From the NCBI RefSeq assembly GCF_006345805.1, contig NC_043000.1:3472001-3536000 (forward strand): a DNA stretch of 64,000 nt. The letters are read 5' to 3'. A program made the position numbers and the translations under genes. Each line of letters opens with the position of its first letter. Within the stretch, counting starts at the first letter, position 1. Under the pieces are notes generated by a model. That model worked only from the letters and a program-made list of their open reading frames with translations. It was not told the DNA's origin and searched no databases. Positions 5,722-60,840 of the stretch are shown here, piece after piece. The stretch is from Octopus sinensis. Taxonomy: Eukaryota.

Positions 5722-5912
5722 TTATGTTCCTTTGCCACCTTTCCTCACCGTTAAAAGTTGTTCCCTCTCAAGAACATCGGCGCTGACGTAATCGTTGTCC
5801 CACTCGAGCTCAGCAGAGTTTGCAGGACTGGTTGGATGTAGCATTTCTTGAGCAGCTAGAGCAACGAGATTTTCTTCTGTGGCTGATCGAGGTGCTTTAT
5901 GGGGTATAATTC
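5722..5912 (-). CDS. AP1AR: AP1AR-like terminal coding exon: (G)IIPHKAPRSATEENLVALAAQEMLHPTSPANSAELEWDNDYVSADVLEREQLLTVRKGGKGT*
   Basis: ttttccag| acceptor, phase 1; TAA at 5722-5724. LEWDNDYVSAD resembles recalled gadkin LEWENDFVSAE; RSATEENL resembles RSKTEEDI. Confidence 0.9.
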
Positions 5913-7324: not shown

Positions 7325-8561
7325 TCAGGTCATCCCATAAGTTCTGTCCAATTTTACCTTTTTTAAGATTGAATGAAATTTAATAGTATTTTAGAATGTC
7401 TAATGGAATTAAAAATTATTTTTATACATTTGTGTACATTTAAACTAATTAAATATTATTTTAGAGAATAATAGAAGTAAAATTTCTTTGGTAAAACCCT
7501 TTCTAACATGGGAGTATCCAAAGCACATAATGCTTTATGAGTACAAAAAAGGAAACTCTGCAGCCGAAGCAACTCAAAACATACACTCAGTTTATGGGAA
7601 AGAATGCTTGAATGAAAGAACTTGCAGAAGATGGTTTGCAAAATTCAGAAATGGAGATGAAGATCAAACAGGGCGTCCAGTTGAATTTGATGATAAGCTC
7701 CTTGAGGCATTACTTGAAGAAAATCTAGCATTATTAGTTGAAGAATTGGCATTAAAGCTTAGATCAAACCATACAACTGTTCATCGTCATCTTCAACAAC
7801 TTGGAAAATGGGTGCCTCATGAATTGTCCGAAAGCACCTGCAAATCCCAAGTTGACATCTGCTCTCCATTCTTGTGAACTCATTTCATCCTTTTTCGATA
7901 GACTTGTGACTGGTGATGAAAAATGGATCTTCTATTGAAATGTTAAACGTCATAAACAGTGGTTTGGTAAAAGAGAAAAGCTCAACCACAACCGAGAAGA
8001 GAACTTCATAGAAAAAAAGGTTCTTCTCTCTATCTAGTGGGATTGCAAAGGAGTAATTCACTTTGAATTGTAACTACCTAATGCAACAATCAATGATCAA
8101 GTCTACTGACAGCAATTAGAACGTTTGAAACAATCTTGGAAGAAAAAAAGACCCACTTTAGTGAATCGATAGGAGTGATGTTTCATCAGGACAATGTGTG
8201 ACCCCACACTGCAAAGATCACATCACAGAAGATCGAAGACCTTGGTTGGGAAAAAATTCCTCATCCACCTTATTCTCCCGACCTTGTTCCTTCAGACTAC
8301 CATTTGTTTCATAGTTTACAGAATCATTTGGGGGACATAACTTTCGCAGGCCAAGAGGAGGTTGAAACTGACATTTCAGAGTTCTTTGCTTTGAAACCAA
8401 AAGAGTTTTATATTGATGGGATAAAAAAGCTTGTAAATAGATGGAAGGAAGTCATAGATAATCAGGGAAAGTACATTGATGATTAAATTTCAATGAAATA
8501 TAACATTTGATCACTTGTTTTCTTTATTCAAAATTCGGACAGAACTTATGGGAGGACCTGA
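7325..8561 (+). mobile_element. Full-length degenerate mariner (Tc1/mariner) DNA transposon
   Basis: TIRs tcaggtcatcccataagttctgtcc / ggacagaacttatgggaggacctga with TA flanks; transposase remnants (WVPHELS, TGDEKWI, PYSPDLVPSDY) broken by stops and frameshifts. Confidence 0.93.
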
Positions 8562-12725: not shown

Positions 12726-13993
12726 CTGGGTCATCCCATAAATAATGCGGTTTTTTCAGTTGCATGAACTAAAAGTCAGACGGGGATGGGATAAACTACA
12801 TGCAACAACTTGTTATAAAAACAAGCAGTAATTTCCCCTTGTCCTTATTGTCAATGCAAGTTGTGAAGAGTGCAGTTCAATTTTAACAGTTATTTTTTCA
12901 AAGCTATAACGGAAGTGACAAAGGGGCATATTTTGCTTTATGAGTTCAATAAAGGCAACAATGCAATGGAAAGTGTGAGGAATATTAATGCAGTATATGG
13001 GGATCGGACAATAAGTGTAAGCCAGTGTCAATGGTGGTTCTAGAATCTCTGAACCAGAAACTACAGTCTAGAACATGACCCTTGTCCTGGAAGATCTGTA
13101 GAGCTCAACAAGGATGTCCTACAAACCCTAGTGGAACAAAATCCCATTGTAACTGTTGAGTAACTAGCAGAGAAGTTTGGATTTGGTCATTCAATCATTT
13201 ATCAACATCTGTGTGCCATCAGAAAAGTCAGCAAATTGGGTCAATGGGTTCCTCACAAACTTTCTGAGTCTAATCACACACAGAAAGTGAATGTGTGTCC
13301 TTCTTTGCTGTCACAGCTCTCCGATGAACCTCTTTTGGACCAAATACTGACTGGTGACAAGAAATGGATTCTCTATAAAAATGTCAAGCACCGAAGACAG
13401 TGGGTAGGGAAAAGAGAAACATCACCACCCCAGGCTAAAGAAAGTTTTCACCCACATAGGATGTTATCTGCTTGGTGGGATATGAAAGGTTTAGTCCATT
13501 TTGAACTTTTAAACCCAAACTAAATAACAAAGGAGATCTTCTTTGAGCAGCTTGAGCGGCTTAAGTCAGCGCTAGAAGAAAAACAACTATCTTTGGTTCC
13601 AAGATGAAAGATGTTCTTCCATCAGGATAATGCTCGGCCACAGCAAGGATGACATCCCAAAGGCTGGAGCAGTTTGAATGGGAAACAATGCAACACCCAC
13701 CCACCACATTCACCAGATATTGCTCCATCTGATTATCATTTATTCCGCAGTCTTCAAAATCATTTGGATGGAAAAAATATGAATTCTGTAGAGGAGATCA
13801 GAACAGTACTGGAGGAGAATATTTCATCATGGACAAGTGAATTTTGGAAGAGGGGCCTTGCAAGTCTACCAGATAGATGGAAGTACATTGTAGAAAATGA
13901 AGGAAAGGATATTTCAGATTTAAAAAGAACTTTATCTTAATTTTGAAAAATAAAAGAGGTATAAAAAGCCACATTATTTATGGGATGACCTAA
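12726..13993 (+). mobile_element. Full-length degenerate mariner transposon
   Basis: TIRs ggtcatcccataaataatg / cattatttatgggatgacc with TA flanks; WVPHKLS, TGDKKWI, HSPDIAPSDYHLFRSL fragments. Confidence 0.93.
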
Positions 13994-21864: not shown

Positions 21865-22445
21865 ATCAGTTTGGAACCCTATCTTGCTCAGAACATTGAC
21901 CTCTTGGAATCTGTTCAGAGACGTGCAACCAAATGCATACCCTCCATCAGACACCTACCATACTCTGAGCGCCTTGTTTCCCTGGGCATGGATTCACTGA
22001 AGCTCCGGCATCTGGTGATGGACTTGGTAAACACCCACAAAGTTATCAACCACCTCACCAACAACAACACTGAACACCATTTGATCTCCACGTGTCCAAC
22101 ACACGTGGACATGCCTACAAAGTCAGAAAACAGCACAGCTCCCATGACTTTCGGAAACATTTTTTCACGCTCAGAGTTGCTGAAGCATGGAACAAACTGC
22201 CTGCATCAGTTGTTGACTGCCATGACACTGCAACCTTTAAGGCCCTCATGCTTTCCGAAATCCGCCGAAACTACACCTGATTGTCCCCCCTTCCATACTC
22301 ATACACATATGTGTATGTCATGACTCATGCACTGTTCCTTTCCTGACGCTTGTACATTACCCTATGTACTATACATATACTTTAGATGAGTTGTAGTGCA
22401 CCTGAGCATTGTACACAATGTTTTATTATTATTATTTATTTATTT
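21865..22445 (+). mobile_element. CR1/L2-type LINE 3' end
   Basis: LLESVQRRATKCIP...SNTRGHAYK...FFTLRVAEAWNKLPASVV; short 3' UTR with (ATT/ATTT)n tail. Confidence 0.9.
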
Positions 22446-25278: not shown

Positions 25279-25322
<44 letters not shown>

Positions 25323-25327
25323 TAATA

Positions 25328-25891
25328 ATGGTTTCAAATTTTGCCACAAGGGCAGCAGTTTTGAGGGAGGGGATGAGTTGATTACATCGACCCCAGTATT
25401 CAACTGGTGCTTATTTTATTGATCCCCAAAAGGATGAAAGGTAAAGTTGACCTCGGTGGAATTTGAACACAGAACGTAGCGACGGGCAAAATACCACTAA
25501 GCATTTCATCCAGCGTGCTAACGATTCTGCCAGCTCAATTTATTAAAGCCCTCTCCAGACATTTATATACATGAAACAACATTAGCATACAATAAGACAT
25601 GAGTTGATGGCATTGTGAGCTTTGTGCTGTAAGGGGCAAAAAACACTGAAAAGAAAAGATAATAATAATAAATATAATAATAATGATCCTTTCGACTGAA
25701 AGCAAAAGGCCTGAAATTGTGGGGGAGGTGATAAGTCAGTTACATCGACCCCACTGGTACTTAATTTAATAACTCCAAAAGGATGAAAGACAAAGTTGAC
25801 TTCAGCAGAATTTGAACTCAGAATGTAGCGATGGGTGTAATACCACTAAGCATTTTGTTCAGTGTGCTAACGATTCTGCCAGCTCGCTGCC

Positions 25892-25924
<33 letters not shown>

Positions 25925-25926
25925 TG

Positions 25927-25961
<35 letters not shown>

Positions 25962-26102
25962 AATAATATAATAATGATAATATAATAATAATAATAATGA
26001 TAATAATAATAATAATGATATAATAATAATAATAATAATGATAATAATAATAATAATAATAATATAATAATAATAATAATAATAATAATGATAATAATAA
26101 TG

Positions 26103-26136
<34 letters not shown>

Positions 26137-26144
26137 TAATAATG

Positions 26145-26193
<49 letters not shown>

Positions 26194-26430
26194 TGATGAT
26201 GATAATAATAATAATAGTTTCAAATTCTGCCACAAGGGCAGCAATTTTAGGAGAAGGGATAAGTTGATTACATCAACCCCAGTGTCCAGCTGGTACTTAT
26301 TTTATTGACTCTGAAAGGATGAAAGGCAAAGTTGACCTTGGGAGAATCTGAACCCAGAACATAGCAACAGGTGAAATACTGCTAAGCATCTTGTCCAGTG
26401 TGCTAATGATTCTGCCAGCTCGCTGCCTCA
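25328..26430 (-). mobile_element. Three SINE-A copies (25328-25540, 25685-25892, 26215-26430)
   Basis: Consensus matches, each preceded on + by (AAT)n. Confidence 0.88.
25893..26216. repeat. Long interrupted (AAT)n microsatellite
   Basis: Seen directly. Confidence 0.97.
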
Positions 26431-26922: not shown

Positions 26923-27565
26923 AATAATAATAATAATAATAATAATTATTATTATTATTATTATTAATTTGAGATTGGTACATGGGTGTTGAGTATCTTC
27001 CACAGCACTTACCAAGCCTTATAATTCATGGAAAGAGACCCCGAGAGACCTTTGACAACAGGTTGCTGTCTGTTCTTACAGAATTAACCAGAGCAAGTAA
27101 GATTGAGATCTCTGAGAGGTAAAATACATAATAATGATAACGAAAATTTTCATAAGTGCAATGTCTCAAATTTGTGGGGATAGAACAGTCAATTATAGCA
27201 ATTTCAATACATAACTGGTACTTTATTTTATCAAGCCCCAAAAGAATGAAAGATAAAGTTGATGTCAGTGGATTTGAACTCAGAATGCAAAGGACTATAA
27301 CTAGACAGATTTGCTTCCTTTGAGATTGGAGTAAGATATTCGGTGCTCCAAAAAGTTTGAATTGAATAGAAAAATAAAAAGGACAGTGAGAAGCAGCAGC
27401 AGCAAGGAGCTAACACATTATTATGAAAATAAACTCTGAGCATTTATACTGAGAGTGCATAAAATAGTTGTCAAAATGTAAGACATTTATTCATTTACAC
27501 ATGCCAATTAGGAATTAGAATGTCAATTAGAAGGCAACAGAGAACATAGAGACAACTGTGTGCAA

Positions 27566-27840
27566 GAGAGAGAGAGAGAGAGAGAAAGAAAGAGAGAGAG
27601 AGAACGAAAGAGAGAGAACAAAAGAGAGAGAGAACAAAAGAGAGAGAGAACAAAAGAGAGAGAGAACGAAAGAGGGAGGGGGAGGGGGAAAGGGAGAGAG
27701 GGAAAGAGAGAGAGGGGGAGGGAGAAAGGGAGAGAGGGAAAGAGAGAGAGAGGGTGAGGTAGAGAGAGCGAAAGGGAGAGAGGGAAAGAGAGAGAGAGAA
27801 AGAGAGAGACAGACAGACAGACGGACGGACAGACAGAGAT
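27566..27840. repeat. Purine-rich (GA)n compound repeat with gagagagaacaaaa subunits, ending in (GACA)n
   Basis: Seen directly. Confidence 0.95.
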
Positions 27841-29149
27841 AGTGTGGAGCAGACAGCAGACAGACGGAGAGAGAAGATATGTTAGCTGCGTTTTCAGAAC
27901 TGGTTACATGTTTCTTCAATGATTGTAAAAATTAGGTGAAGAGTGTTTTGCATGAGAACAAAATGTTTGACAATGATATTCAATAAAGGAGTGACAGAAA
28001 GTCATTTGCAGGGATTTGTGAAGGTTAAAGGTTTAGACAGATAGACACAATTGTAAAATATTCTGTGTCAGCTAATTTGCCTCTATTGATATATAGCTTG
28101 GTCGGATATAATTCTAATAGCATTTTTGCATGGCTAACAAATTCTGTAGATGTTGGACTCGTGAGAAATATCTCAATCAAGACATTTCAATAAATTAGAA
28201 AGATGTTTCAAATTTATTGTTTATCGGACCACTTTTGAATTGGCTGCTTGTTCAACTTAAGAACCTTGCTTGGTAGTAACTAGTTCCACTTAACTGTGAA
28301 GTTTGGTTGGTTTCTAAGTCTTGCATTATCTTGCCCTGTGACATGGCAGCTCCTTCACTCAGTCGAACAACTAGCTCCACCTTAAATTCAGTGTCAGAAA
28401 CTAGAAACTGATTGTTAAAACTGCCAACACAGAAGGTCAAGTTTGATGAAAGAAAAGAGAAAAGAAGGGCAAAACATTTGATGGGATCATCTGAAGAGAG
28501 AAATAAACGCAGTACTTTGGTGTTAGCAACAACAACTATTGATCATTCTTTAACACTAGCACTTCTTTCTTCAACTAAACCAAATAATTATTGCTATGCA
28601 TGTATGTCTACAGTTGTGTATGCCAGTATATAGATTTGAGTCAATGAATGTATGAGCGCTTGTGTGAGTTTAGTTGCCTCTGTTTGCATGAATATGAGCA
28701 TGTGTACAAATGTGTGCAATTGTGCATGAATACATGAGTGTATATATGTGTATAAATGGGTGAACTTGATTATGTTTATATGTATATGTAGAAGATTGTA
28801 TGTATGTATCTATCATTGTCAATACCATTTTATGTCTGCATCACCATGTTGCTGCATGGGTTGGAAAGGTCTTCTCCACTTGTTACAGTTCATTATCATT
28901 TTCTGTAGATCAAGCATCTTGAAAGGAGCTTTTGCTACTACTTCTTACTATGTCTTCTATTACAAGTTCCTTCAACTTCAATTATTTGACACCTCTTTAC
29001 CCAACAGTAATCCTCCTTATACAGCACATACCCATCCTAGTTCTTCCTTTTCTTTTGCACACTACATCTGATTCTGCTATCAACCAGTTTTTCTCTCAGT
29101 TCATTTGTGCAGCATCTTTCATACACTCTAACATTACACAACTATTGAA

Positions 29150-29480
29150 GCATTCTTACCTCATTAATATCTATCCAAGGCTTGGGCCCCATGCCATCCG
29201 CCCACAACAAAAATCGCACTCTCATCTCATAACAACAATACGGCACAATTATTTCACCTCAATTGGCCCCGCTCTCTTTAACATTACACCAAAACACATT
29301 AAAACAGAAACAGACCCTATAGGGTTCAAGAAGTCTTTGGACAGATTCCTTCAAGAAATCCCGGATAAACCTCCTACACCCGGATATGTCTCTGTAAACA
29401 ATAACTTTCTACTTGAGTGGGCCATAGTGCCCAAATTCTGACTTGAAAGACTTCACCAGGTGGTGCTATTAAGTTAGACA
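29150..29480 (+). mobile_element. LINE (CR1/Crack/Daphne-like) 3' end
   Basis: PRLGPHAIRP...NYFTSIGPALFNITPKHIK...FKKSLDRFLQEIPDKPPTPGY...LLEW C-terminal motif. Confidence 0.8.
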
Positions 29481-30234: not shown

Positions 30235-30612
30235 TGCCTCATCCACAGAGTGTAGTGGGTGCTTTTTACGTGCCACCGGCACAGAAGCAAGTCAAGGCGG
30301 CGCTGGCATTAGCCACGTTTGGATGGCGCTTTTTACGTGCCACCGGAACAGAAACCAGTCAAGGTGGCGCTGGCATCGGCCACGTTCGGATGGTGCTTTT
30401 TACGTGCCACTGGCACAGAAACCAGTCAAGGTGGCGTTGGCATCGGCCACGTTTGGATGGTGCTTTTTACGTGCCACTGGCACAGAAACCAGTCAAGGTG
30501 GCGTTGGCATCGGCCACATTCAGATGGTGCTTTTTACGTGCCACCGGCACAGAAGCCAGTCAAGGCGGCGCTGGCATCAGCCACGTTCAGATGATGCTTT
30601 TTACGTGCCACC
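30235..30612 (-). repeat. 67-bp tandem repeat (5 units plus a partial) within a SINE-C body
   Basis: acgtgcc recurs at 30268, 30335, 30402, 30469, 30536 and 30603; preceded by gagtgtagtgggtgctttt as in other SINE-C copies. Confidence 0.9.
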
Positions 30613-31152: not shown

Positions 31153-31357
31153 AATAGTAATAGTAGTAATAATAATAATAATAACAATAATAACAATAAC
31201 AATAACAATAATAATATTGATAATAATAATAATAATAATAATATTGATAATAATAATAATAATAATAATAATATTGATAATAATAATAATAATAATAATA
31301 ATATTGATAATAATAATAATAATGATAATAATATTGATAATAATAATAATAATAATG

Positions 31358-31424
<67 letters not shown>

Positions 31425-31442
31425 TAATAATAATAAGAATAA
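31153..31442. repeat. (AAT)n array with periodic ATTGAT interruptions
   Basis: Seen directly. Confidence 0.97.
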
Positions 31443-32033
31443 TATATATGCTTCTCTCCTTCTCTCAAATGTCAGTATTTTGATAATTACACAGAAGCAG
31501 TGTACAGAACATGTTATGGGAGTAACAAAACGAAATGTCTGTTAGAAATAGAATTTTAGTCAGGTGCATCAACAGACAGACAGGCTTTCCAACTGGCTTG
31601 CAGTACAATACATACAAGAATTACTAATTGCATGAAGATAGCAAGGAAATAAACATAGAATGATGAATATTTCAGTGAGAACTAGGAATCCACGACTGGT
31701 AAACAAGGAAACAATAACAAAATAGTGGAATAGAAACATAAAATGAAATTGTCGTGCAAAACAATAATTAAATAAATAAGAACTGATATTAGCTTTTGAA
31801 GAGTTTAATAAAGGCCTGCTCCATGGTGGGTGGATTTTGGGCAGTGTTAGGATGTGTTAAGAAATAAAATACAAAATTACTAAACAGTGTGGTAAGGCAA
31901 GTGATATAGGTAAGTTGTGTGTGTTAAACAGATAAAAAAGCTGAACTAATGAAACAAAGCAGTAAATTGGTTTGGCTAAGCTACAATAGCAGTGGGCTTA
32001 AGCAAATGAGCAGGGACCATCTTCAGCACCAAC

Positions 32034-32135
32034 CTGCTTCATGATCCCATTCCAGATCTAAGGAAGATGCCTCAGTATGTGACCGATCTCGAGTATGTGT
32101 TGTGCTGCTACTAGTACTTTGACCATCTGCAGATG
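32034..32135 (-). CDS. AP1AR: AP1AR-like exon: (A)SADGQSTSSSTTHTRDRSHTEASSLDLEWDHEA
   Basis: aaacag| acceptor, CAG|gttggt donor; 102 nt, phase 1-1. SLDLEWDHE resembles recalled gadkin SLDLEWEDE. Confidence 0.9.
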
Positions 32136-32347
32136 CTGTTTGGAGTAAAATCCACAGTTAATAGACAAACGAGAGAAATACAAAGCGCAGAAAGAAATTA
32201 TGTTAAAGCATGCACCCATTAGCTGCACAGTATTATTCAATTGTAAACAATGTTAGTCACAGATGATGTTAATCACAGTTATCAACAAAACACTCAAAAA
32301 TACAAACCTACTTCATTCAACGCAAAGATGTCTAAAGTTGTTAATTT

Positions 32348-32639
32348 TTAACACGTTAACCGCTACTGGTTCATTGCAAACTACACACTACTGCTATATG
32401 CACCAGTGGTGGTACATTTTTGTAATTTGAGAAAATATTTTCTTCTATATTTTTTTGACATGATTTCGAGGATATTTAAATAACTTGAGTGCTAAATACT
32501 AAAGTTTAATTATAAAATAAGTTGAACAGACACTCACCTGCTTCTGTCACAGATGTCGTTACACTGAGATCAAGAGCTCGTGAAATACTTGGTGTCACCA
32601 GTAAGTTCCAGTAACAGGCTGTGGCGGTTAACGTGTTAA
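32348..32639. mobile_element. Putative piggyBac-like MITE with TTAA-CACGTTAACCGC termini
   Basis: TTAA at 32348-32351 and 32636-32639; 15-bp TIR with 14/15 match (CACGTTAACCGCTAC / CACGTTAACCGCCAC). Confidence 0.6.
32538..32618 (-). CDS. AP1AR: Candidate 81-nt cassette exon of AP1AR-like gene: (A)CYWNLLVTPSISRALDLSVTTSVTEA
   Basis: ccacag| acceptor and CAG|gtgagt donor; symmetric phase 1-1 matching flanking exons; no stop. Weak pyrimidine tract; lies inside an inverted-repeat element. Confidence 0.45.
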
Positions 32640-32745
32640 AGAATAATCAACAATCTTTTTACATCTTAACATTAAAATATTATGTTTAGGTTAATAAGAT
32701 CACATTGGTTAGTATATAAACAAATAAAGTAAAATCTATGTTGAA

Positions 32746-32967
32746 TTAATCGTTTAGCATATAAACTGGCCAGATTCAGCCCAAATATTCTGTTTTATGT
32801 TAAAACCGGTCATATTGGACCACTTGCATCTAACAGACAATGTCATTCCAAAAATAAACAATTATATCATTAAAATCTCAAACCTATGGTATAATATAAA
32901 ATTAATTTAAACAATTGAATAAACAAACATTACATTTGACAGATTAATTAGACTGCTAAAAGATTAA
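32746..32967. mobile_element. Older degenerate piggyBac-type MITE, family 2
   Basis: tttagcatataaactggcc ... ctgctaaaagattaa resembles 54752-55386. Confidence 0.65.
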
Positions 32968-33684
32968 ATAACTGTACAGTTAATTTTGCAGCAATTTTAA
33001 TTGTGTTGAATAACTGTGGTTAGTTTTACAAAAATTTCAATGATTCACTTTTTCTCTATATAATATTATTTCTAACATAAGCACAAAGCCATCAGTTTCG
33101 AAGAGGTGGGGTTATTTAATTAAATCAAGCATAGTATATGACTGGCACTTTATTTTATTAATCCAGGTGAGATAAAAGGTGAGGTTGACCTCTGCAGGAT
33201 CTGAACTCAGAATCTAAAGAGTCAGAACAAATGGTGCAAGTTATTTTGTGCTACTCCCAAATCCATTGACCTTTGACTGTAAATAATATTGAAATAGCTT
33301 CTATTGCATTAACTTAAATGTTAAGAATATCAAAGTTCCATTTTAAACTGAATAATCTTTCAAAATACAAGAAAGAAATTCATTTTATTTCCAGCTTGAA
33401 AAAAAAAACAGAAAAAAAAGTAAAATAAAAGAATACTATAACCACTACCCCTTGTTGAGGTATTGAAATGAGAGATATTAAGTTCAACCCTAAGAAAACA
33501 GGCTTCAATTAAGGTGCTATCTGAGTCTCAATTTCAGGAATATTGTTTAAATCTTAAATTTAGACCATTTCCATGACAGAACTACAATCTTAAAAGCATA
33601 TCACATGAGTGGGGCGTGGGCAGTGGATCTTCTATTGCAGCAGGATGAAGTTATATCTGCATATAGCTGTTGTCTAGCCTAGAT

Positions 33685-36607: not shown

Positions 36608-37452
36608 CATATCTTGCATGTAGAAATAGATGTACGACTGCTACTCCTAAGTTTAGAGTTCCAAATAGATTATCATAGTCTAGTCTGCTTCAGGTATTGT
36701 GGTTAAGCAACTACTATACATAGTAATATTACTAGCTATAACATACAGAGCAAACATTGAAATTAAGATAAACACAACTTTATATCATTTGTTTTTCTGT
36801 ATGTTTCGTGACTGTGGTTGTTTGGAACTTTGCACTGTTCAATGGGATGCTTAATCACAATGGATTATGGAGAACACTTTATTGCAATATGTTACAGAGA
36901 TCTGTAACAAAATGCAGAGTTTCAATCAACCACAATGATGAAACACATGTAGGAACAAATGATATAAAGTTGTGGTTATCATAATTTCTCCCATACACAC
37001 ACACATATATGCATATTAATTCTAATATTCTAGTCCATTCCTCTGTTACTCTCTAATCCACTTGGAATATTTCAGGGTCATCCTGTATCTTATGCTACAC
37101 CTTAACTAATTCCTTCATGACCATCTTTGTGGTTTCTCAACCTGCTAGAAATATCGGCCAAAAAACAGAAAAAAAACCCCAAACACACAAAAACGAGGGT
37201 ATGAGACATTAACCCTTTTGTTACCATATTTCTGCTGAAATACACTGCCTTTATTGAAATTAATTTTCAAATTCATGGAGAATTTAGTAAAAAAATTGCT
37301 ATCATTAATTTGGTATTTGAAACAAAAACACGAAATTATTAAGAAAGTTTTAATTTAGATAACTTTAAATCACCAGTTAATTTTTACCTATTTTACTTGG
37401 ATGGACTCTCATAACCATTCGATATTTAAAAAGTCCTTTTATATTTCTCTAA

Positions 37453-38633: not shown

Positions 38634-41464
38634 ACTCTAAATCATCTTATTTAATCACAGGCACTAACCAATTATTGATATTAAAATTTTAAATATAATA
38701 TTAACAGATCAAACCTCACCCATCTTTATTCTTGTTTACTAAACTAAGAGCCTAACCTCAACTAACATCACAATAAGCATACATTATCAAATAGAATAGT
38801 TAAGAAACATAATGGTTGTGGTAGTGATGATGATATCAAACTATATTACACAACAGTTTTAGATTTACATTACGCTGTAAACACTAATTTATTTATTGGT
38901 TGACTTAAAATCTTTACATTAGTGTTACGAAATCATAATTAAATAATAAATGATTTTTAAAGAAGTATTTTAATAAATTCAATGAAATAAAAACCAAAAT
39001 TAAATTAACATATGTTTAGAGAGAAATTTAGCCTGAGATGTTATAAATTTATATTTCTATTATATTTATTGTTGTAGTTATTGTTGTTGCTTAGCCTGAA
39101 GTCAGTACTGATTGAGCAGATCTGCAAAGTCATTCCTATTGTGACCATCATGTTTTTTAGTTCGATATATGTACACACAATTCAAATTATCCTTTCTCTT
39201 ATAAGATGCTAGGATGAGATTTAAGGTAGATTTGGCAGCTATTTCTAGTAGATCATTCAAGGGTTTGGCAGCTCCCTCATAGACTTAACCTTTGTAGGCT
39301 TTTGAGACTGATGAGGCAGAAACAAATGAAATCCATCATAAGATTTTAGAATGATGATGCATGAAAGGAAAAAAATAAAAACTAATGATGGAATCCCTGA
39401 TGGTTGTGGTTCTGCAGATCAAAGACTCAGCTAAGTGCTTTAATGTGGAATTTTTAATGGATGAGATAGAGTATGAAAGGATGACAGAAGAAGAGACAGA
39501 GCAAGGGTACGCAGGGTTGACTTGGTTGGGTTAGTACACAGCCTGCTGCCATAAAGGAGCAGCAACCATTGTAGTTACAGCAGGAAAGACATAGGAAGAG
39601 TACAGCACAGTGGTATACAAGTGGTTCAAGTGTATTGGTGTGTGTGAAGTTTTCCTAATCGATCGGATGGTCTTCTTTCCTGGTATAGTCTAGACTGTGT
39701 GTGTACATGTGGATGCATGCTTGCATCCAACAGCTGCTCCATCCCCTAAATGTAAGCAGCAACCCAATATGTGAGCCATACTCTGATGCACTCAACATGG
39801 AATTGTAATTCTTGCTTGAGGTTTAGTTTTTAAAGGCCCACTTGATAGTTTAAATTGTTGCAGATATATGTGCAAATGTAATATGTGAGTGTAGAATGTA
39901 AGTGTGTGATGTTTCTGTTAAACCCTTGTAAGCATAAAAATGTGTGTGTGTGTGTATTTGAATATTTATTTTATTTAAATATTTCCTTATCTTCAGTCAA
40001 AGTATTTGTCAGCATTGTCATACATACATCACATCATCATCATCATCATTTAGCGTCCGTTTTCCATGCTAGCATGGGTTGGACGGTTCAACTGGGGTCT
40101 GTGAAGCTGGAAGGTTTCATCAGGCCCAGTCAGATCTGGCAGTGTTTCTATGGTTGGATGCCCTTCCTAACGCCAACCATATATATATATATGATGTATG
40201 TATGTATTTGTCAGCATTGTCATACATACATACATTTTATATATATATATATATGATGTATGTATGTATGTATGGCAATGCTGACAAATACTTTGACTGA
40301 AGATAAGGAAATATTTAAATTAAATAAATATTCAAATATTTAATGTGTTAAAGGATTTTCGGGGAACTGGAAGGAAAATATAGAGAATATATATATATAT
40401 ATGTATGTATATATATATATATTCTTTTATTTGTTTCAGTTATTATTTGACTGCGGCAATACTGGAGCACCACCTTAAGAGGTTTTAGTTTTAAGCACCA
40501 CCTGAAGGGGTTTTATGAGACCCAAGGACTTATTCTTTGTAAGCCTAGTACTTATTATATCAGTCTCTTTTGCTGAATCGCTAAGTTATGGGGACGTAAT
40601 CCAAACTTTTGTGATGCAGTCTTGACCATCTGCACAATATTAGAGCTTTCGAGATTGTTAAGTTAAAATTTGTATGACACGAGATAGTTTGAGCTGTCAG
40701 TTGTTCATGATTAGCAAAGGTAAATATAAAGCCGAGAGTTTGTTTGCTTGAGAATTGCAGTAACTTGGCCTGATTTGAGTGACAAGGGGGATGGATATCC
40801 AATCTCTGTTGCATTATGCTTTGATGCTCCTTGCTTATAGAAGATATGTATACTTACAAAAGGTTTCAAGGTTGTTTTTAGAAAGAAAGTTATTTAGCTT
40901 CAGGTTAATCCTGGTCAAACATACCTATGATAAAAAGCATTGTATCCATAACCATTATATCATGTTTAGGGGTATGGGCATCTAGGACTATATTATCTAA
41001 TGTGTGGTCTTCATTTTACAACAAAGTGAAGAGTGATTTGAGAGAGATTTGGCTGTTACTTCTAGCAGGCCAGGTAACTTGAGACTCCTTCATTGGCTTG
41101 TAGAAGCTGATTCGAGGAGGAATCATTGTCATAAAGAGAAGGAAGAATGTTGAAGCAATAAAGTAGATGATTAATGCAGATAGTGAAGGCATTATGAGAA
41201 ATGATTAAGTGTTTAGAGCAAGGTGGAAGAAAGCTATCAAATATGCAGTGATGGAGATGACTGTTTGAAAACTTTCACACAGTGGTTTATTTAGAGTGGA
41301 GTCTATAAATGAGCAGCTTTTCCAGAAAGATTTGTTTGTGTCAAAGAACAACTTTGAAAAACACTATTTAGAAAAACTGCAGCCACTAGTAAATTACAAA
41401 AACAATGAAAAATTAGTATCATTGCAAATGTATAAAGTATAAAGAAGGTAAGTCTGCCTCACTA

Positions 41465-42348
41465 TATGTGGTCTGATCAATAAGTATCTGGACTATTGCT
41501 ATAGTAATGGAGCTGAAGCACAGAGAGTGAAGCCACTCGGCACAGATTGACCTTGAGCTCTGCTGTGCATGCACACTAAGTTTTAATGTTCTAGCTCACT
41601 TCTGCTGTTTACAGCAGTTCTTGGAAGGAACATGTGTAGTGTGTGATTGTTGCACTGACCATGACAGAGAAAGATGAGCAGAGAATCTGCATCAAATTTT
41701 GCCAAAAGGTTGGCGATACCTGCTCAGAGGCCTACGCAAAGTTTTCAAAAAGTTTTCCATGTTCTCAACACAATCAAGATCTTATGCAACTGAAACCCGA
41801 ATGTACTTTTGGTCAGCTGAAAGCAGTTTTGGCACAGACTTGGCAGACATGTGTCTCATACCCAAATCTTCAGTGATAATGGACTAAACTGAACTGTAAC
41901 TTATCTGCACATCCCCTGATAGCTCACAGATGGGGATTCGATGGTTTCCCCTCACAGCTGCAATGTTTTTCTCAGTTCTGCTGGTTGCAGGTCTCCCAGG
42001 ACATTTGTCATTATCGACATTTTTTTGCCCAACTTGAAAACGTCATAACCACTCATACACTTGTGTGCAGCTCATACACTCCTCTCCATACACTTTCTGT
42101 AACTTTGCGTAGGCCTCTGAGCAGGTATCACCATGACAACTTTCTCTGTCAAGATCAATGCGATGATCACACACTACACACCTTCCTTCCAAGCACTGCT
42201 GTAAACAACAGAAGTGAGATAGAATGTTAAAACTTAGTGAGCATGCACAACAGAGTCCCAGGTCAATTTGTGCCAAGCAACTTCACTCTTGATGCTTTAG
42301 CTTCACTTCTATGGCAACAGTTCAGATACTTATTGATTAGACCTCGTA
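41465..42348. mobile_element. Tc1/mariner composite made of two 5' ends in inverted orientation
   Basis: TA-flanked TIR-like ends; the transposase start (GDTCSEAYAK) is read inward from both ends. Confidence 0.8.
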
Positions 42349-42703
42349 TACGCTGAGGACACTAATGATGATAATGGAATGGTCAATAACCTATTAACCA
42401 GTTAAAATTTAATTAAGAAAATGCATGTGTCTAGTCTTCTTGTGCTGTGTCTATCCTTCTTGAGCTACTGTTTATGTAATAAAAGTAAATGTGTTGCCAC
42501 TAAACCTTTTAATATATTTCCTAAGTAGTGAGACAATATAGTCTGGTTTCATAGAGATAGCATGAATGAGGCAATGATTTAGTTTAGAATATAATTTGAA
42601 GACAAGAAATTCTCAATGCAATTAATTTAAAGCAGTGCAATATAAGCTTCATATTTTAAGTTGTAATAATATATAAACTGATATATATATAGTTGTAGCT
42701 TAC

Positions 42704-42786
42704 CTTGACGTAACTGTGTCCTTGCTGACAGAGACCGAGCTTTCACACTAGCCAGGAACATTTCGAAATCATCTTCACCTCCGGCT
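42704..42786 (-). CDS. AP1AR: AP1AR-like exon: (V)AGGEDDFEMFLASVKARSLSARTQLRQ
   Basis: Pyrimidine tract and catttag| acceptor, AAG|gtaagc donor; 83 nt, phase 2 to 1. Resembles recalled gadkin SGPEDDFESCLRNMKSQ. Confidence 0.92.
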
Positions 42787-43050: not shown

Positions 43051-43681
43051 AAGACAGACCAGTTTTATCTACTCCGTTTGGTTCTATAGTTCAATAGAGC
43101 TGTTTTAATCATAGGATCTAAAGGGATCATGTAGCTTATAAGCTATTTAGCACAATGGTTAGATGATCCAAGTAATCTATTAAGCTATAATCAGGGAATC
43201 TAAGTTAATTATGATCCTTGGAAAAGTATTACTGCGGCAGAAAAGTGACAATGTGAGAGAAACCTTTTCTCTAACATGTCTTAGAGAGATCCACTGACTA
43301 AAAGATGGGTAAAATAACGAGTGTTCTGTTTAATAATATGGTTCTTTAATACATGACAGAAGTTTACTTTAAAACAATCCTCTGATTTCTGACATAAACA
43401 CAAATCAACAAATATGGAAAGAAGTGTATAGGTGATTATGTTGTTTCCTAATACCTGAGTGGTACTTTATTTTATTGATTTCATGAGAACGAAAGACTAA
43501 GTTAACCTTGACGGAACATTAAATCAAGTCTGTTGAACTATCACTTCTGTCTATCTACTGCTTCCTTTAAGTGTTCTATGATAAAGACACAATGGGAAAG
43601 GTAGTTGATGTCGGTTAGGTACGTGCTGTGTAAGACATTTTCCTACAAACATAGAATTACAAGTTATTGAGATGCAGACAT

Positions 43682-43910
43682 TTAACCCTTTAGTGTTCAC
43701 ATTATTCTGCCAAAATTAATCCTTTTTTATCCACATTGTTTTGAACTAATCACGCATTATCTTGTAGCTATGAGATTTTGATGAGGTAGCTGTTAATTTT
43801 TAAAACGACATTGTAGGGTTGGTGTGAGAGACCAGATCTAGCCAGTTTGACCATAAAACAGGCAGAATACTTTTGGCCGGATATGGCCGGTTTAAATGCT
43901 AAAGGGTTAA
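43682..43910. mobile_element. piggyBac-type MITE, family 2 (CCCTTTAG termini)
   Basis: TTAA-CCCTTTAG ... CTAAAGGG-TTAA. Confidence 0.85.
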
Positions 43911-43957
43911 GCAACATTAAAACAACAGTTCCACATATTAAACTAAGGTATACTTAC

Positions 43958-44124
43958 ACGTCCCAGTCATTTTCGTTATCCCCTAACCAGGAACGGTCCG
44001 TGTGAGTTTTAGTAGCTTGTTGTTCCTTAGCAATACGCTGAAGCCGTACTATCCGTGCAGCCTCTCTTCTAGCTTCATAGTAAGCTTCCTCTTCCATACG
44101 CAACTCCTCCTCTTGTTTGGCAAG
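43958..44124 (-). CDS. AP1AR: AP1AR-like coiled-coil exon: LAKQEEELRMEEEAYYEARREAARIVRLQRIAKEQQATKTHTDRSWLGDNENDWD(V)
   Basis: cattag| acceptor, GT|gtaagt donor; 167 nt, phase 0 to 2, no stop. Resembles recalled gadkin LALQEEKLRLEEEALYAAQREAARAAK. Confidence 0.92.
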
Positions 44125-54751: not shown

Positions 54752-55083
54752 TTAATCCTTTAGCATTTAAACTGGCCATATCCAGCCCAAATATTCTAAC
54801 ATTTTTTCTGCTCAAACTGTCACGATCTGGCCCATTTCACCTACGCTACAGTGTCATTCTAAAAATAAGTAACCACATCATCAAAATCTCAAAATTACAA
54901 GATAATGCATGGAGCGCAGGAGTGGCTGTGTGGTAAGTAGCTTGCTTCCCAACCACATGGTTCTGGGTTCATTCCCACTGCGTGGCACCTTGGGCAAGTG
55001 TCTTCTACTATAGCCTCGAGCTGACCAAAGCCTTGTGAGTGGATTTGGTAGATGGAAACTGAAAGAAGCCCGTCGTATATATG

Positions 55084-60293: not shown

Positions 60294-60573
60294 TATTTGA
60301 AAATATAAATATATATTCTACAGGAAACAAAAGAATTTTTGAATGCAGAATAGCTGTGAAAATAGCTTAGGGGATTGGGTAAATACCCTTAAGAAGATGG
60401 AAAAAGTGGACAGCAAGCTGCTACAGAGAATCAAACCCTGTACATTACAAATTCCAGCAGAACCAGCCACTTTTTCCATCTTCTAAGGGTATTTTACCCT
60501 ATCTTCTAAGCTGCTTTCACAGCTATTCCTTTATTTTCTATAGAATACCAACTCATTTGGCACATCTAATTTT

Positions 60574-60743: not shown

Positions 60744-60840
60744 CTGTGCTTCAATCTCAGCATCAATATTTTTTTGCTCGTGAACAAGAGCCCTATAGTG
60801 TTTCTCAGATAAAAGCTGTTTCTCAAAGTCAGTCAGGGGC
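60744..60840 (-). CDS. AP1AR: AP-1 complex-associated regulatory protein (gadkin)-like, most 5' exon found in window: (R)PLTDFEKQLLSEKHYRALVHEQKNIDAEIEAQ
   Basis: tatag| acceptor and CAG|gtaatg donor; 97 nt, phase 2 to 0. Resembles recalled vertebrate gadkin RPLTEEEIVDLRERHYDSIAEKQKDLDKKIQKE. Confidence 0.88.

What the first reader, a model, noticed from the sequence alone, without database searches (positions are those of the whole stretch)
32348..32639. In-frame cassette exon inside a TTAA-flanked inverted-repeat element whose repeat covers its own 3' splice site
Seen: TTAA+CACGTTAACCGCTAC ... GTGGCGGTTAACGTG+TTAA (284 bp between the TTAAs). On the gene strand it contains an 81-nt phase 1-1 stop-free segment (32618-32538) with a CAG|GTGAGT donor. 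The acceptor CAG overlaps the end of one arm, and TTTAAC (overlapping the TTAA) puts a branch-point-like A at -18. In pre-mRNA the arms would form a ~20-bp stem over the branch point and acceptor region, with one A:C mismatch. Established: TTAA TSDs typify piggyBac, A:C mismatches in dsRNA are favoured ADAR sites, and coleoid cephalopods edit heavily. Inference: either exonisation of a piggyBac MITE or an ancestral exon under RNA-structure/editing-controlled splicing. The peptide LVTPSISRALDL faintly echoes recalled vertebrate gadkin VLTPNTESSCDL at the equivalent position.
Basis: partly seen in the sequence, partly recalled or inferred. Interest (0 to 1): 0.8.

Follow-up and report, generated by a model that had tools for sequence, protein, structure and literature searches.

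The report
Octopus-specific exon inside an RNA hairpin
A small optional exon of the octopus gadkin (AP1AR) gene, seen only in Octopus and already in public gene models, lies inside a ~345-base inverted repeat predicted to fold over its own splice acceptor; this is a known way of making and tuning new exons, and its transposon origin and any RNA-editing control remain unproven.

Summary
The window is the Octopus sinensis AP1AR (gadkin) gene on the minus strand. The sequence observation holds. The 81-nt segment 32618-32538 is a real, frame-preserving cassette exon. It is present in RefSeq isoforms X1, X3, X5 and X6 of O. sinensis and O. bimaculoides and absent from X4 and X7.

The exon is missing from about 60 other lophotrochozoan AP1AR models. 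It is also missing from the Sepia pharaonis genomic locus, where the neighbouring exon 5 is 100% conserved. It is therefore a lineage-specific new exon, not an ancestral one, and the vertebrate "gadkin echo" is not supported.

The inverted repeat is real and stronger than described. It continues about 23 nt beyond both TTAAs (arms 32324-32366 and 32621-32667). About 40 bp pair, with a duplex energy of -47 kcal/mol and pairing probabilities near 1. The stem buries the candidate branch point and the weak pyrimidine tract, stops 2 nt before the AG, and loops out the exon.

Because the repeat runs through the TTAAs, they cannot be read as a target-site duplication. A piggyBac MITE is possible but unproven. 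Copy number and orthologous introns could not be obtained.

Best reading: a young exon born in an inverted-repeat (probably transposon-derived) segment, kept alternative by a splice-site-masking stem. Editing control is speculative.

The parts
32538..32618 (-). 81-nt cassette exon, phase 1-1. It encodes (A)CYWNLLVTPSISRALDLSVTTSVTEA.
   Evidence: The translation is identical to the insertion in O. sinensis isoform X1/XP_029635602.1 (P0006) and in X3, X5 and X6. In O. bimaculoides X1, X2, X3, X5 and X6 it differs by 2 aa.
32619..32640 (-). 3' splice-site region: AG at 32620-32619, a weak pyrimidine tract, and the branch-point-like UUAAC with its A at 32636 (-18). All except the AG lies inside the stem.
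   Evidence: Sequence. Only 3 U and 9 of 17 pyrimidines at -20..-4, against 10-12 U for constitutive exons e3, e4 and e6. Pairing probabilities are 0.94-1.0 for 32624-32640.
32532..32540 (-). Consensus 5' splice site CAG|GTGAGT
32621..32667 (-). Upstream (RNA 5') arm of the inverted repeat. The core 15-mer is 32621-32635, the TTAA is 32636-32639, and the degenerate outer part is 32640-32667.
   Evidence: the repeat finder I1, BLAST self-hit 81% over 47 nt, outer-part test 0/500 shuffles, pair probabilities.
32324..32366 (-). Downstream (RNA 3') arm. It begins 172 nt 3' of the donor. The core 15-mer is 32352-32366, the TTAA is 32348-32351, and the outer part is 32324-32347.
32364..32364 (-). 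The A of the single A:C mismatch in the core stem, opposite C at 32623. Its RNA context is 5'-UAG-3', and it is the third nucleotide from the inner end of the helix.
   Evidence: The core duplex is -25.1 kcal/mol as is and -31.7 if the A is read as G/I.
42704..42786 (-). AP1AR exon e4 (…GGEDDFEMFLASVKARSLSARTQLRQ). It ends in phase 1 and is the upstream partner of the cassette.
32034..32135 (-). AP1AR exon e5 (102 nt, phase 1-1; SADGQ…SSLDLEWDHEA). It is an ancient exon that is itself alternative, and it starts 402 nt downstream of the cassette.
   Evidence: It is 100% aa and 82% nt identical in Sepia.
5722..5912 (-). AP1AR last coding exon e6 (to the stop codon)
43958..44124 (-). AP1AR exon e3
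60744..60840 (-). AP1AR exon e2. Exon 1 (MGNC…) lies beyond the window.

Best explanation
This is a real, publicly annotated alternative exon of Octopus AP1AR (gadkin). It arose in the octopod lineage after the split from cuttlefish and squid and before the O. sinensis / O. bimaculoides split.

The exon, its acceptor and its consensus donor all lie inside a ~345-bp segment (32324-32667). That segment is bounded by 43-47-nt imperfect inverted repeats.

The most likely history (inferred) is that an inverted-repeat element landed in the 10.6-kb phase-1 intron between e4 and e5. It was probably a decayed MITE-like DNA transposon of unresolved superfamily. By chance it carried an open 81-nt frame between an AG and a strong GT.

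The most likely mechanism (inferred from thermodynamics and from what is known of long-range pre-mRNA structure) works as follows. Once the downstream arm is transcribed, about 270 nt after the acceptor, the two arms form a ~40-bp duplex. The duplex buries the candidate branch point and the already weak pyrimidine tract, ends 2 nt before the AG, and loops out the exon. The stem therefore opposes exon definition and keeps the exon alternative. Inclusion then depends on recognition of the strong donor and the acceptor before the stem closes, or on the stem being opened.

A duplex of this length is also a plausible ADAR substrate. Whether it is edited, and whether editing alters splicing, is unknown.
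For: Shown:
- Gene identity is 100% to O. sinensis AP1AR X4.
- The cassette is present or absent in all four combinations with e5 across RefSeq isoforms of two Octopus species. It is also in the independent 2015 O. bimaculoides model A0A0L8HEW3.
- The 27-aa insertion occurs only in Octopus among 77 AP1AR proteins.
- The Sepia locus L004 retains e3, e4, e5 and e6 but has no cassette-like ORF and no arm sequence.
- The Pfam profile treats the cassette as an insertion.
- The inverted repeat is confirmed and extends beyond the TTAAs.
- The 351-nt fold gives -96.1 kcal/mol, z = -5.2, with the long-range stem in both the MFE and the centroid structure.
- Duplex energy is -47.3 kcal/mol, with pair probabilities near 1.0 in a 1-kb context.
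- The stem is stronger than at 600 of 600 random intronic positions and than at e3, e4 and e5, which give -15 to -20.
- The cassette has the poorest pyrimidine tract of the six exons and a consensus donor.

From the literature:
- Looped-out exons have lower inclusion, more so for more stable structures. Stable pairings avoid branch points, obstruct splice sites and are enriched in A-to-I sites (PMC8052449).
- DNA transposons, including piggyBac and many MITE families, are present in O. vulgaris, and some are recently active (PMC13282606).
Against: - No second copy of the segment was found. There is none in the 64-kb window, and no peptide from any of its six frames appears in any other protein of a 5.8-billion-protein collection or of 1.84 billion representatives.
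- No target-site duplication is recognisable at the outer ends of the repeat. A transposon origin therefore rests on form only.
- The octopus genomes themselves could not be searched, so copy number is unknown.
- No orthologous intron could be fetched, so there is no covariation evidence for the stem.
- No expression data were available here, so the inclusion level, its tissue pattern and the direction of the stem's effect are not shown.
- Other complex inverted repeats are common in these introns, with at least four more in the window. A repeat as such is not special here.
Confidence: 0.6

Rival explanations
1. One reading: a 284-bp piggyBac-type MITE (32352-32635) with 15-bp terminal inverted repeats and a TTAA target-site duplication was exonised.
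For: - TTAA lies on both sides, the arms are 15 bp, and the element is small.
- The first six bases, CACGTT, fit the loose piggyBac terminal motif C[C/A/T][C/A/T][T/G/A][T/A/G][T/G/A]. The arm length fits the 12-19 bp range (PMC5381638).
- piggyBac is present in O. vulgaris with 36 families and 15.6 Mb, including 474 recently active insertions in 6 of those families.
- The inner 19-20 bp are better matched (1 mismatch) than the outer 23 (4 mismatches plus indels). That would fit a younger element nested in an older palindrome.
Against: - TTAA is palindromic, so it extends any inverted repeat and cannot be told from a duplication.
- The repeat continues significantly beyond it. The "empty site" would then have to be a 54-nt palindrome centred exactly on the insertion point.
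- The terminal motif is loose, with about a 6% chance for a random hexamer (my calculation).
- A TA-duplicating Tc1/mariner reading fits the same bases, and that superfamily is about 8 times more abundant (119 Mb against 15.6 Mb).
- No other copy was found.
Confidence: 0.2
2. The inverted repeat is a functionally neutral leftover. The exon is alternative simply because its pyrimidine tract is weak, and the stem does not form or does not matter in vivo.
For: - The acceptor is weak on its own.
- Complex inverted repeats are frequent in these introns.
- The exon is included often enough to appear in four of seven RefSeq isoforms in two species despite the stem.
- Splicing is co-transcriptional, and the downstream arm appears about 270 nt after the acceptor.
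Against: - The predicted duplex is very stable (-47 kcal/mol, probabilities near 1).
- It covers exactly the branch-point and pyrimidine-tract region. In human data such structures lower the inclusion of looped-out exons in proportion to their stability (PMC8052449).
Confidence: 0.3
3. An ancestral AP1AR exon, homologous to the vertebrate gadkin segment, kept under structure or editing control.
For: Only a faint resemblance, recalled from memory (TP…DL). Alternative exons can be missing from single-isoform annotations.
Against: - It is absent from every non-Octopus model, including RefSeq species with several RNA-seq-based isoforms, and from a hemichordate.
- It is absent from the Sepia genomic intron, although e5 next to it is 100% conserved.
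- Adding it lowers the Pfam AP1AR score.
- A tblastn of the remembered human segment finds only the LDLEW motif of e5.
- It changes at 2 of 27 aa between the two Octopus species, against 3 of 258 for the rest of the protein.
Confidence: 0.03
4. Non-transposon origin: a local inverted duplication, or complementarity that evolved in place around a de novo exon.
For: - There is no recognisable duplication at the outer ends.
- No other copy was found.
- The best-matched part of the repeat is the inner part next to the splice site, as selection on a stem would predict.
Against: - The inner-versus-outer difference is not statistically compelling: 1 of 20 mismatches against 4 of 23 plus indels.
- The segment sits among transposon copies.
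- Paired 40-50-nt arms around a few hundred AT-rich bases are the ordinary form of a MITE.
Confidence: 0.2
5. The cassette is a diverged tandem duplicate of exon e5. Both are phase 1-1, both end in GAAGCAG|GT, and both contain LDL.
For: A shared GAAGCAG|GT donor context and an [A/S]LDL motif.
Against: Local alignment of the two exons with flanks is not better than shuffles: score 19 against 15.4 +/- 2.2, with 44 of 500 shuffles as good. Only the donor aligns.
Confidence: 0.04

Closest known systems
Alu exonisation in primates, in particular the NARF Alu exon whose inclusion depends on an inverted Alu partner and on A-to-I editing (Lev-Maor et al. 2007, PMC1852406)
   Same: A lineage-specific, in-frame alternative exon lies inside repeat-derived sequence. 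An intramolecular duplex with an inverted partner overlaps the exon's 3' splice-site region, and that duplex is the kind ADAR acts on.
   Different: - In NARF the duplex is formed by two separate ~300-nt retroelements, and editing is needed to create the AG and to remove a stop codon.
- Here the AG and the open frame are already encoded in the genome.
- The arms here are 43-47 nt and belong to one small segment.
- Neither repeat-family membership nor editing has been shown.
[quoted passage not shown] 2021, PMC8052449; Drosophila, Raker et al. 2009, PMC2724269)
   Same: Intronic complementary boxes a few hundred nt apart bracket a cassette exon. One box overlaps the branch-point and acceptor region. 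The predicted energy lies in the most stable class.
   Different: Those cases are defined by conservation and compensatory substitutions or by mutational tests. Here there is only single-sequence thermodynamics, and the exon and repeat appear young.
piggyBac-derived MITEs (for example human MER85/MER75; my own knowledge) and the piggyBac superfamily definition of Bouallegue et al. 2017 (PMC5381638)
   Same: Small size, no transposase, TTAA next to ~15-bp inverted termini that start with C and fit the loose terminal motif.
   Different: The inverted repeat runs through and beyond the TTAAs. Multi-copy status is unknown. No matching autonomous element has been identified.
Exon-intron duplexes that direct site-specific ADAR editing and couple it to splicing (GluA2 R/G site, ADAR2 self-editing that creates a 3' splice site; my own knowledge; review PMC9105294)
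   Same: A duplex at an exon-intron boundary. It carries an A:C mismatch in a UAG context, the kind ADAR prefers.
   Different: - The mismatched A here is intronic, 174 nt downstream of the donor.
- It sits 3 nt from the helix end, a position ADARs tend to spare.
- No editing data exist for this locus.

Membership tests
Cassette (skipped) exon | AG…GT boundaries and length divisible by 3, so the reading frame is kept | tested here: met
   ccacAG|…CAG|GTGAGT, 81 nt, phase 1-1.
Cassette (skipped) exon | Both inclusion and skipping forms exist in transcripts | tested here: met
   RefSeq isoforms with the cassette (X1, X3, X5, X6) and without it (X4, X7) in O. sinensis and O. bimaculoides, plus UniProt A0A0L8HEW3. 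This is annotation-level evidence. Reads were not inspected.
piggyBac-type MITE | TTAA target-site duplication immediately outside the terminal inverted repeats | tested here: inconclusive
   TTAA is present on both sides. It is palindromic, though, and lies inside a longer inverted repeat.
piggyBac-type MITE | Terminal inverted repeats of 12-19 bp that begin C[C/A/T][C/A/T][T/G/A][T/A/G][T/G/A] (PMC5381638) | tested here: met
   15 bp, CACGTT…. The motif is loose.
piggyBac-type MITE | Inverted repeat ends at the duplication, so flanks are unrelated host sequence | tested here: not met
   The flanks outside the TTAAs are themselves inverted repeats: 19 of 23 matches with one indel, 0 of 500 shuffles.
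piggyBac-type MITE (or any MITE) | Many dispersed copies in the genome | not testable with these tools
   There is no second copy in the window and none in metagenome contigs. No octopus genome is searchable here.
Splicing-regulatory long-range RNA structure | Stable complementarity that overlaps splice signals | tested here: met
   -47.3 kcal/mol, pairing probabilities near 1, z = -5.2, stronger than 600 of 600 random sites. It covers positions -3 to -49 of the acceptor.
Splicing-regulatory long-range RNA structure | Compensatory substitutions or conservation across species | not testable with these tools
   Orthologous loci are too long to fetch or not on record. Sepia lacks the whole segment.
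Splicing-regulatory long-range RNA structure | Mutational or probing evidence that the stem changes inclusion | not testable with these tools
   This needs an experiment.
ADAR substrate | Duplex of 20-30 bp or more containing adenosines in a favourable context | tested here: met
   About 40 bp pair, with an A:C mismatch in a UAG context. This is in silico only.
ADAR substrate | A-to-G differences between RNA and DNA | not testable with these tools
   No reads were available. A literature search for AP1AR plus cephalopod returned nothing.
Ancestral AP1AR exon | Homologous segment at the same position in other phyla or classes | tested here: not met

The most novel reading that the evidence does not exclude
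The ~40-bp stem is a working switch. Octopus ADAR binding or editing, and/or temperature-dependent melting, opens or locks the duplex that hides the branch point and acceptor. Inclusion of an octopus-only 27-aa segment would then be tuned by the editing machinery or by the environment. That segment is inserted just before, or (when e5 is skipped) in place of, the first tryptophan-acidic kinesin-binding motif of gadkin. This would be a cephalopod example of editing or RNA structure governing splicing of a newly born exon.
Probability: 0.1. Interest if true: 0.65.

Novelty: new member of a known kind. Interest (0 to 1): 0.35.

Why it matters
The case links three topics of interest in cephalopod biology: transposon-rich giant introns, exceptionally active ADAR editing, and proteome diversification.

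If the stem controls inclusion, the locus is a compact, mutable model of about 350 bp. It could be used to ask how dsRNA structure and editing interact with splicing in an animal that edits heavily.

It would also show a new exon being born with its own built-in repressor.

The protein context is not trivial either. The cassette sits directly before e5, and isoform X5 carries it without e5. That neighbouring alternative exon carries LDLEWDHE, one of gadkin's two tryptophan-acidic motifs. By my own knowledge of vertebrate gadkin, such motifs bind kinesin light chain.

As it stands, the finding is one more instance of known phenomena: an exon inside repeat-like sequence, and a looped-out alternative exon. 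The exon is already in RefSeq.

Tried and rejected
1. A first protein search with only the three-exon peptide returned Lingula and two short Logan ORFs but missed the identical Octopus proteins. The word index is insensitive for short queries. The full-length query solved this.

2. Fetching the orthologous introns failed.
- O. bimaculoides X2: not on record.
- O. bimaculoides X1: gene range of 250 kb is too long.
- Argonauta: 191 kb is too long.
- The 2015 O. bimaculoides models: not on record.
- A 55-aa window ORF spanning the downstream arm: not on record.
- Only Sepia could be fetched.

3. Copy-number proxies all came back empty, apart from matches to the locus itself or to its own AP1AR isoforms.
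- Self-BLAST of the window.
- The two-arm and single-arm patterns against JGI metagenome contigs.
- The cassette ORF against 1.84 billion representative proteins.
- A six-frame pseudo-protein of 32300-32700 against 5.8 billion proteins, which hit only the Octopus AP1AR cassette isoforms.
- None of these collections is expected to hold octopus intergenic DNA, so the negatives are weak.

4. Exon duplication from e5, and a possible degenerate third copy at about 32340-32300, are not significant.

5. Rfam found no family anywhere in the window at gathering thresholds.

6. A target-site duplication at the outer ends of the long repeat: none is visible.

7. Literature.
- No paper mentions AP1AR together with cephalopods.
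- The paper id that I recalled for the 2017 cephalopod editing study is not held.

8. circRNA or hairpin small-RNA readings were considered and set aside. The stem would occlude the very acceptor needed for back-splicing, an 81-nt circle is very small, and there are no data either way.

Full report
**What the locus is.** The window (35.6% G+C) carries exons 2-6 of the AP1AR (gadkin, AP-1 complex-associated regulatory protein) gene on the minus strand.
- A protein assembled from the window's exons is 100% identical to Octopus sinensis AP1AR isoform X4 (P0004).
- The Pfam AP1AR domain is hit at 103 bits.
- Exon coordinates, from tblastn, transcripts and splice sites, are:
  - e2: 60840-60744
  - e3: 44124-43958
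  - e4: 42786-42704
  - candidate cassette: 32618-32538
  - e5: 32135-32034
  - e6: 5912-5722 (to the stop codon)
- Exon 1 (MGNC…) lies outside the window.

**The observation.**
- TTAA lies at 32348-32351 and 32636-32639.
- The 15-nt arms differ at one position. On the RNA strand this is an A:C mismatch (A at 32364, C at 32623).
- The 81-nt stop-free segment is phase 1-1 and has a ccacAG| acceptor and a CAG|GTGAGT donor.
- The C of the CAG is the last base of the upstream arm.
- A UUAAC motif puts an A at -18 (32636).
- The 15-mer with up to two mismatches occurs only at these two sites in 64 kb, against 0.02 expected.

**The exon is real and already annotated.** O. sinensis isoform X1 (XP_029635602.1, 285 aa) equals X4 (258 aa) plus exactly the 27 residues ACYWNLLVTPSISRALDLSVTTSVTEA that I translate from 32618-32538.
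- X5 carries the cassette but skips e5, and X3 and X6 also carry it.
- O. bimaculoides has the same set (X1, X2, X3, X5, X6 with the cassette; X7 with neither exon), with two amino-acid changes in the cassette.
- The independent 2015 O. bimaculoides model A0A0L8HEW3 also contains it.
- All four combinations of cassette and e5 exist, so they are two independent cassette exons.
- This is annotation-level evidence; I could not inspect reads.

**The exon is lineage-specific.** In a MAFFT alignment of 77 AP1AR proteins, the 27-residue insertion is present only in the two Octopus species.
- The alignment covers cephalopods, gastropods, bivalves, annelids, a nemertean, a brachiopod and a hemichordate.
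- The RefSeq species with several isoforms, the decapodiform transcripts, the Sepia model and the single Argonauta model go straight from …RQ to the e5 sequence, or skip e5.
- I fetched the Sepia (Acanthosepion) pharaonis genomic locus (L004).
- There, e3, e4, e5 and e6 are found. e5 is 35 of 35 identical in protein and 82% identical in DNA, down to the same weak GTTGGT donor.
- The 7.7-kb e4-e5 intron of Sepia holds no cassette-like reading frame, and neither arm sequence occurs anywhere in the 35 kb.
- Adding the cassette lowers the Pfam AP1AR score from 103.1 to 98.9 bits over the same profile positions, so the family profile treats it as an insertion.
- The "ancestral exon" alternative and the gadkin echo are therefore not supported.
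- The exon arose after octopods split from decapodiforms and before the two Octopus species split.
- It changes faster than the rest of the protein: 2 of 27 residues against 3 of 258.

**The inverted repeat is longer than described.** The sequences outside the two TTAAs are themselves inverted repeats.
- AAGATGTCTAAAG-TTGTTAATT aligns with AAGATGTAAAAAGATTGTTGATT, scoring 24 against 12.6 +/- 2.1 in shuffles, with 0 of 500 as good.
- This matches the 47-nt, 81% BLAST self-hit.
- The arms are thus 32324-32366 and 32621-32667.
- No direct repeat is visible at these outer ends.

**What that does to the piggyBac reading.** TTAA is its own reverse complement, so a TTAA in one arm is necessarily mirrored in the other. 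Each arm in fact contains two.
- It cannot be read as a target-site duplication when the repeat runs through it.
- To keep the piggyBac reading, one must suppose insertion exactly at the centre of a pre-existing 54-nt palindrome.
- The termini do fit the published, loose piggyBac definition: TTAA, 12-19-bp arms, and C[C/A/T][C/A/T][T/G/A][T/A/G][T/G/A] (PMC5381638).
- piggyBac is present in the sister species O. vulgaris, with 36 families (15.6 Mb); six of these families carry 474 recently active insertions.
- Tc1/mariner elements have a TA duplication that would fit the same bases, and they are about eight times more abundant (PMC13282606).
- No second copy turned up in any search open to me. 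None of those searches covers octopus non-coding DNA, so copy number remains the key unknown.
- The segment sits among other repeats: 32738-32969 and 33043-33237 have copies elsewhere in the window.
- Four other complex inverted repeats lie in the same window.

**The predicted RNA structure.** The 351 nt of pre-mRNA fold to -96.1 kcal/mol, against -67.8 +/- 5.4 for shuffles (z = -5.2). The arm-arm stem appears in both the MFE and the centroid structure.
- The arms alone give a -47.3 kcal/mol duplex of about 40 base pairs.
- In a 1,050-nt context, nearly all of those pairs have probability 0.9-1.0.
- The stem covers positions -3 to -49 of the acceptor. This includes the candidate branch-point A (-18) and the whole pyrimidine tract.
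- The AG, the exon, the donor and 171 nt of downstream intron sit in the 254-nt loop.
- The same calculation at 600 random intronic positions gives -22.2 +/- 6.2, with none as low. The real exons e3, e4 and e5 give -15 to -20.
- The cassette also has the weakest pyrimidine tract of the six exons (3 U in 17, against 10-12 for e3, e4 and e6), but a perfect donor.

**How it most likely works.** In human genes, exons looped out by stable complementary regions have lower inclusion, more so the more stable the pairing.
- Such pairings avoid branch points, obstruct splice sites they cover, and are enriched in A-to-I sites (PMC8052449).
- By analogy (inferred, not shown), the stem here should oppose recognition of the cassette's acceptor once the downstream arm has been transcribed, about 270 nt after the acceptor.
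- Inclusion then depends on a kinetic window, or on proteins that open or hold the duplex.
- The duplex is long enough for ADAR.
- Its one mismatch is an A opposite C in a UAG context, which is the preferred configuration (my knowledge). Reading that A as G strengthens the core from -25.1 to -31.7 kcal/mol.
- Against this, the A lies three nucleotides from the inner helix end, where ADARs edit poorly (my knowledge). It is intronic, and there are no editing data for this locus.
- Editing control is therefore a hypothesis, not a finding.

**Comparison with what is known.**
- The nearest precedent is Alu exonisation, especially the NARF Alu exon, whose use depends on pairing with an inverted Alu and on editing (PMC1852406).
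- The general class is long-range intronic pairings that loop out exons or mask splice signals (PMC8052449, PMC2724269).
- This case differs in several ways. It is in a cephalopod, and both arms belong to one small segment. The splice sites and the frame are genomically encoded, and neither repeat-family membership nor editing has been shown.
- I file it as a new member of a known kind. The exon itself is already in public annotation. The relation between the exon and the hairpin does not seem to have been described.

**Verdict.**
- Observation: confirmed.
- Interpretation: partly supported.
- The exon is real and young.
- The hairpin is real, stronger than reported, and positioned to repress the exon's own acceptor.
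- "piggyBac MITE" is one unproven possibility among several.
- "Ancestral exon" is rejected.
- Editing control is untested.
- Interest is moderate.

Noticed in passing
window 32034-32135 (minus); L004 13114-13218: Exon e5 (SADGQ…SSLDLEWDHEA) carries one of the two tryptophan-acidic LEW[DE] motifs of the protein. It is itself an ancient alternative exon. e4>e6 forms lacking it occur in Octopus X7, decapodiform transcripts, Gigantopelta X2, Owenia and Lingula. Its protein sequence is 35 of 35 identical between Octopus and Sepia, with the same weak GTTGGT donor.
   Followed up: partly
L001 and L002 (Logan RNA-seq contigs SRR25158151, SRR8281688): Transcripts of a related (decapodiform-like) cephalopod join exon 1 directly to e3. 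They skip the 97-nt e2, which shifts the frame, and they also skip e5. The called ORF therefore starts at an internal Met.
   Followed up: partly
proteins P0047, P0048, P0056 (Logan transcripts, taxon unknown): Another lophotrochozoan lineage has a different short insertion (for example SLHLDEGVDPDD) at the same e4/e5 junction. This phase-1 intron therefore seems to have gained small cassette exons more than once.
   Followed up: no
window 41463-41676 / 42137-42350; 39955-40040 / 40253-40338; 36759-36834 / 36913-36988; 60348-60409 / 60467-60528: Four other complex inverted-repeat pairs with arms of 62-214 nt at 82-92% identity. The first lies about 350 nt downstream of exon e4. They are likely inverted transposon copies or MITEs and potential dsRNA in the same pre-mRNA.
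   Followed up: no
window 7488-7877 and 13236-13523 (plus); 21871-22323 and 28932-29441 (plus): ORF fragments that look like mariner-type transposase (HTH and catalytic parts) and like the C-terminal tails of LINE reverse transcriptases, inside the 26-kb e5-e6 intron. They were judged by eye from the translations only.
   Followed up: no
window 30258-30612: A 67-nt G+C-rich tandem repeat, 5.3 copies at 92% identity. AAT/TAA and AG microsatellites lie at 25279-25329, 25893-26216, 27565-27821 and 31153-31444.
   Followed up: no
window 33043-33237 and 32738-32969: Just upstream of the hairpin (in gene orientation) lie a short interspersed repeat with at least 12 diverged copies in the window and a second repeat with copies at 43680-43917 and 54752-54893.
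   Followed up: partly
window 32301-32314 (minus strand GAAGTAG|GTTTGT): A donor-like site just 3' of the downstream arm resembles the e5 donor region (ATGAAGCAGGTTGGT). The similarity is borderline: 23 of 500 shuffles are as good.
   Followed up: yes
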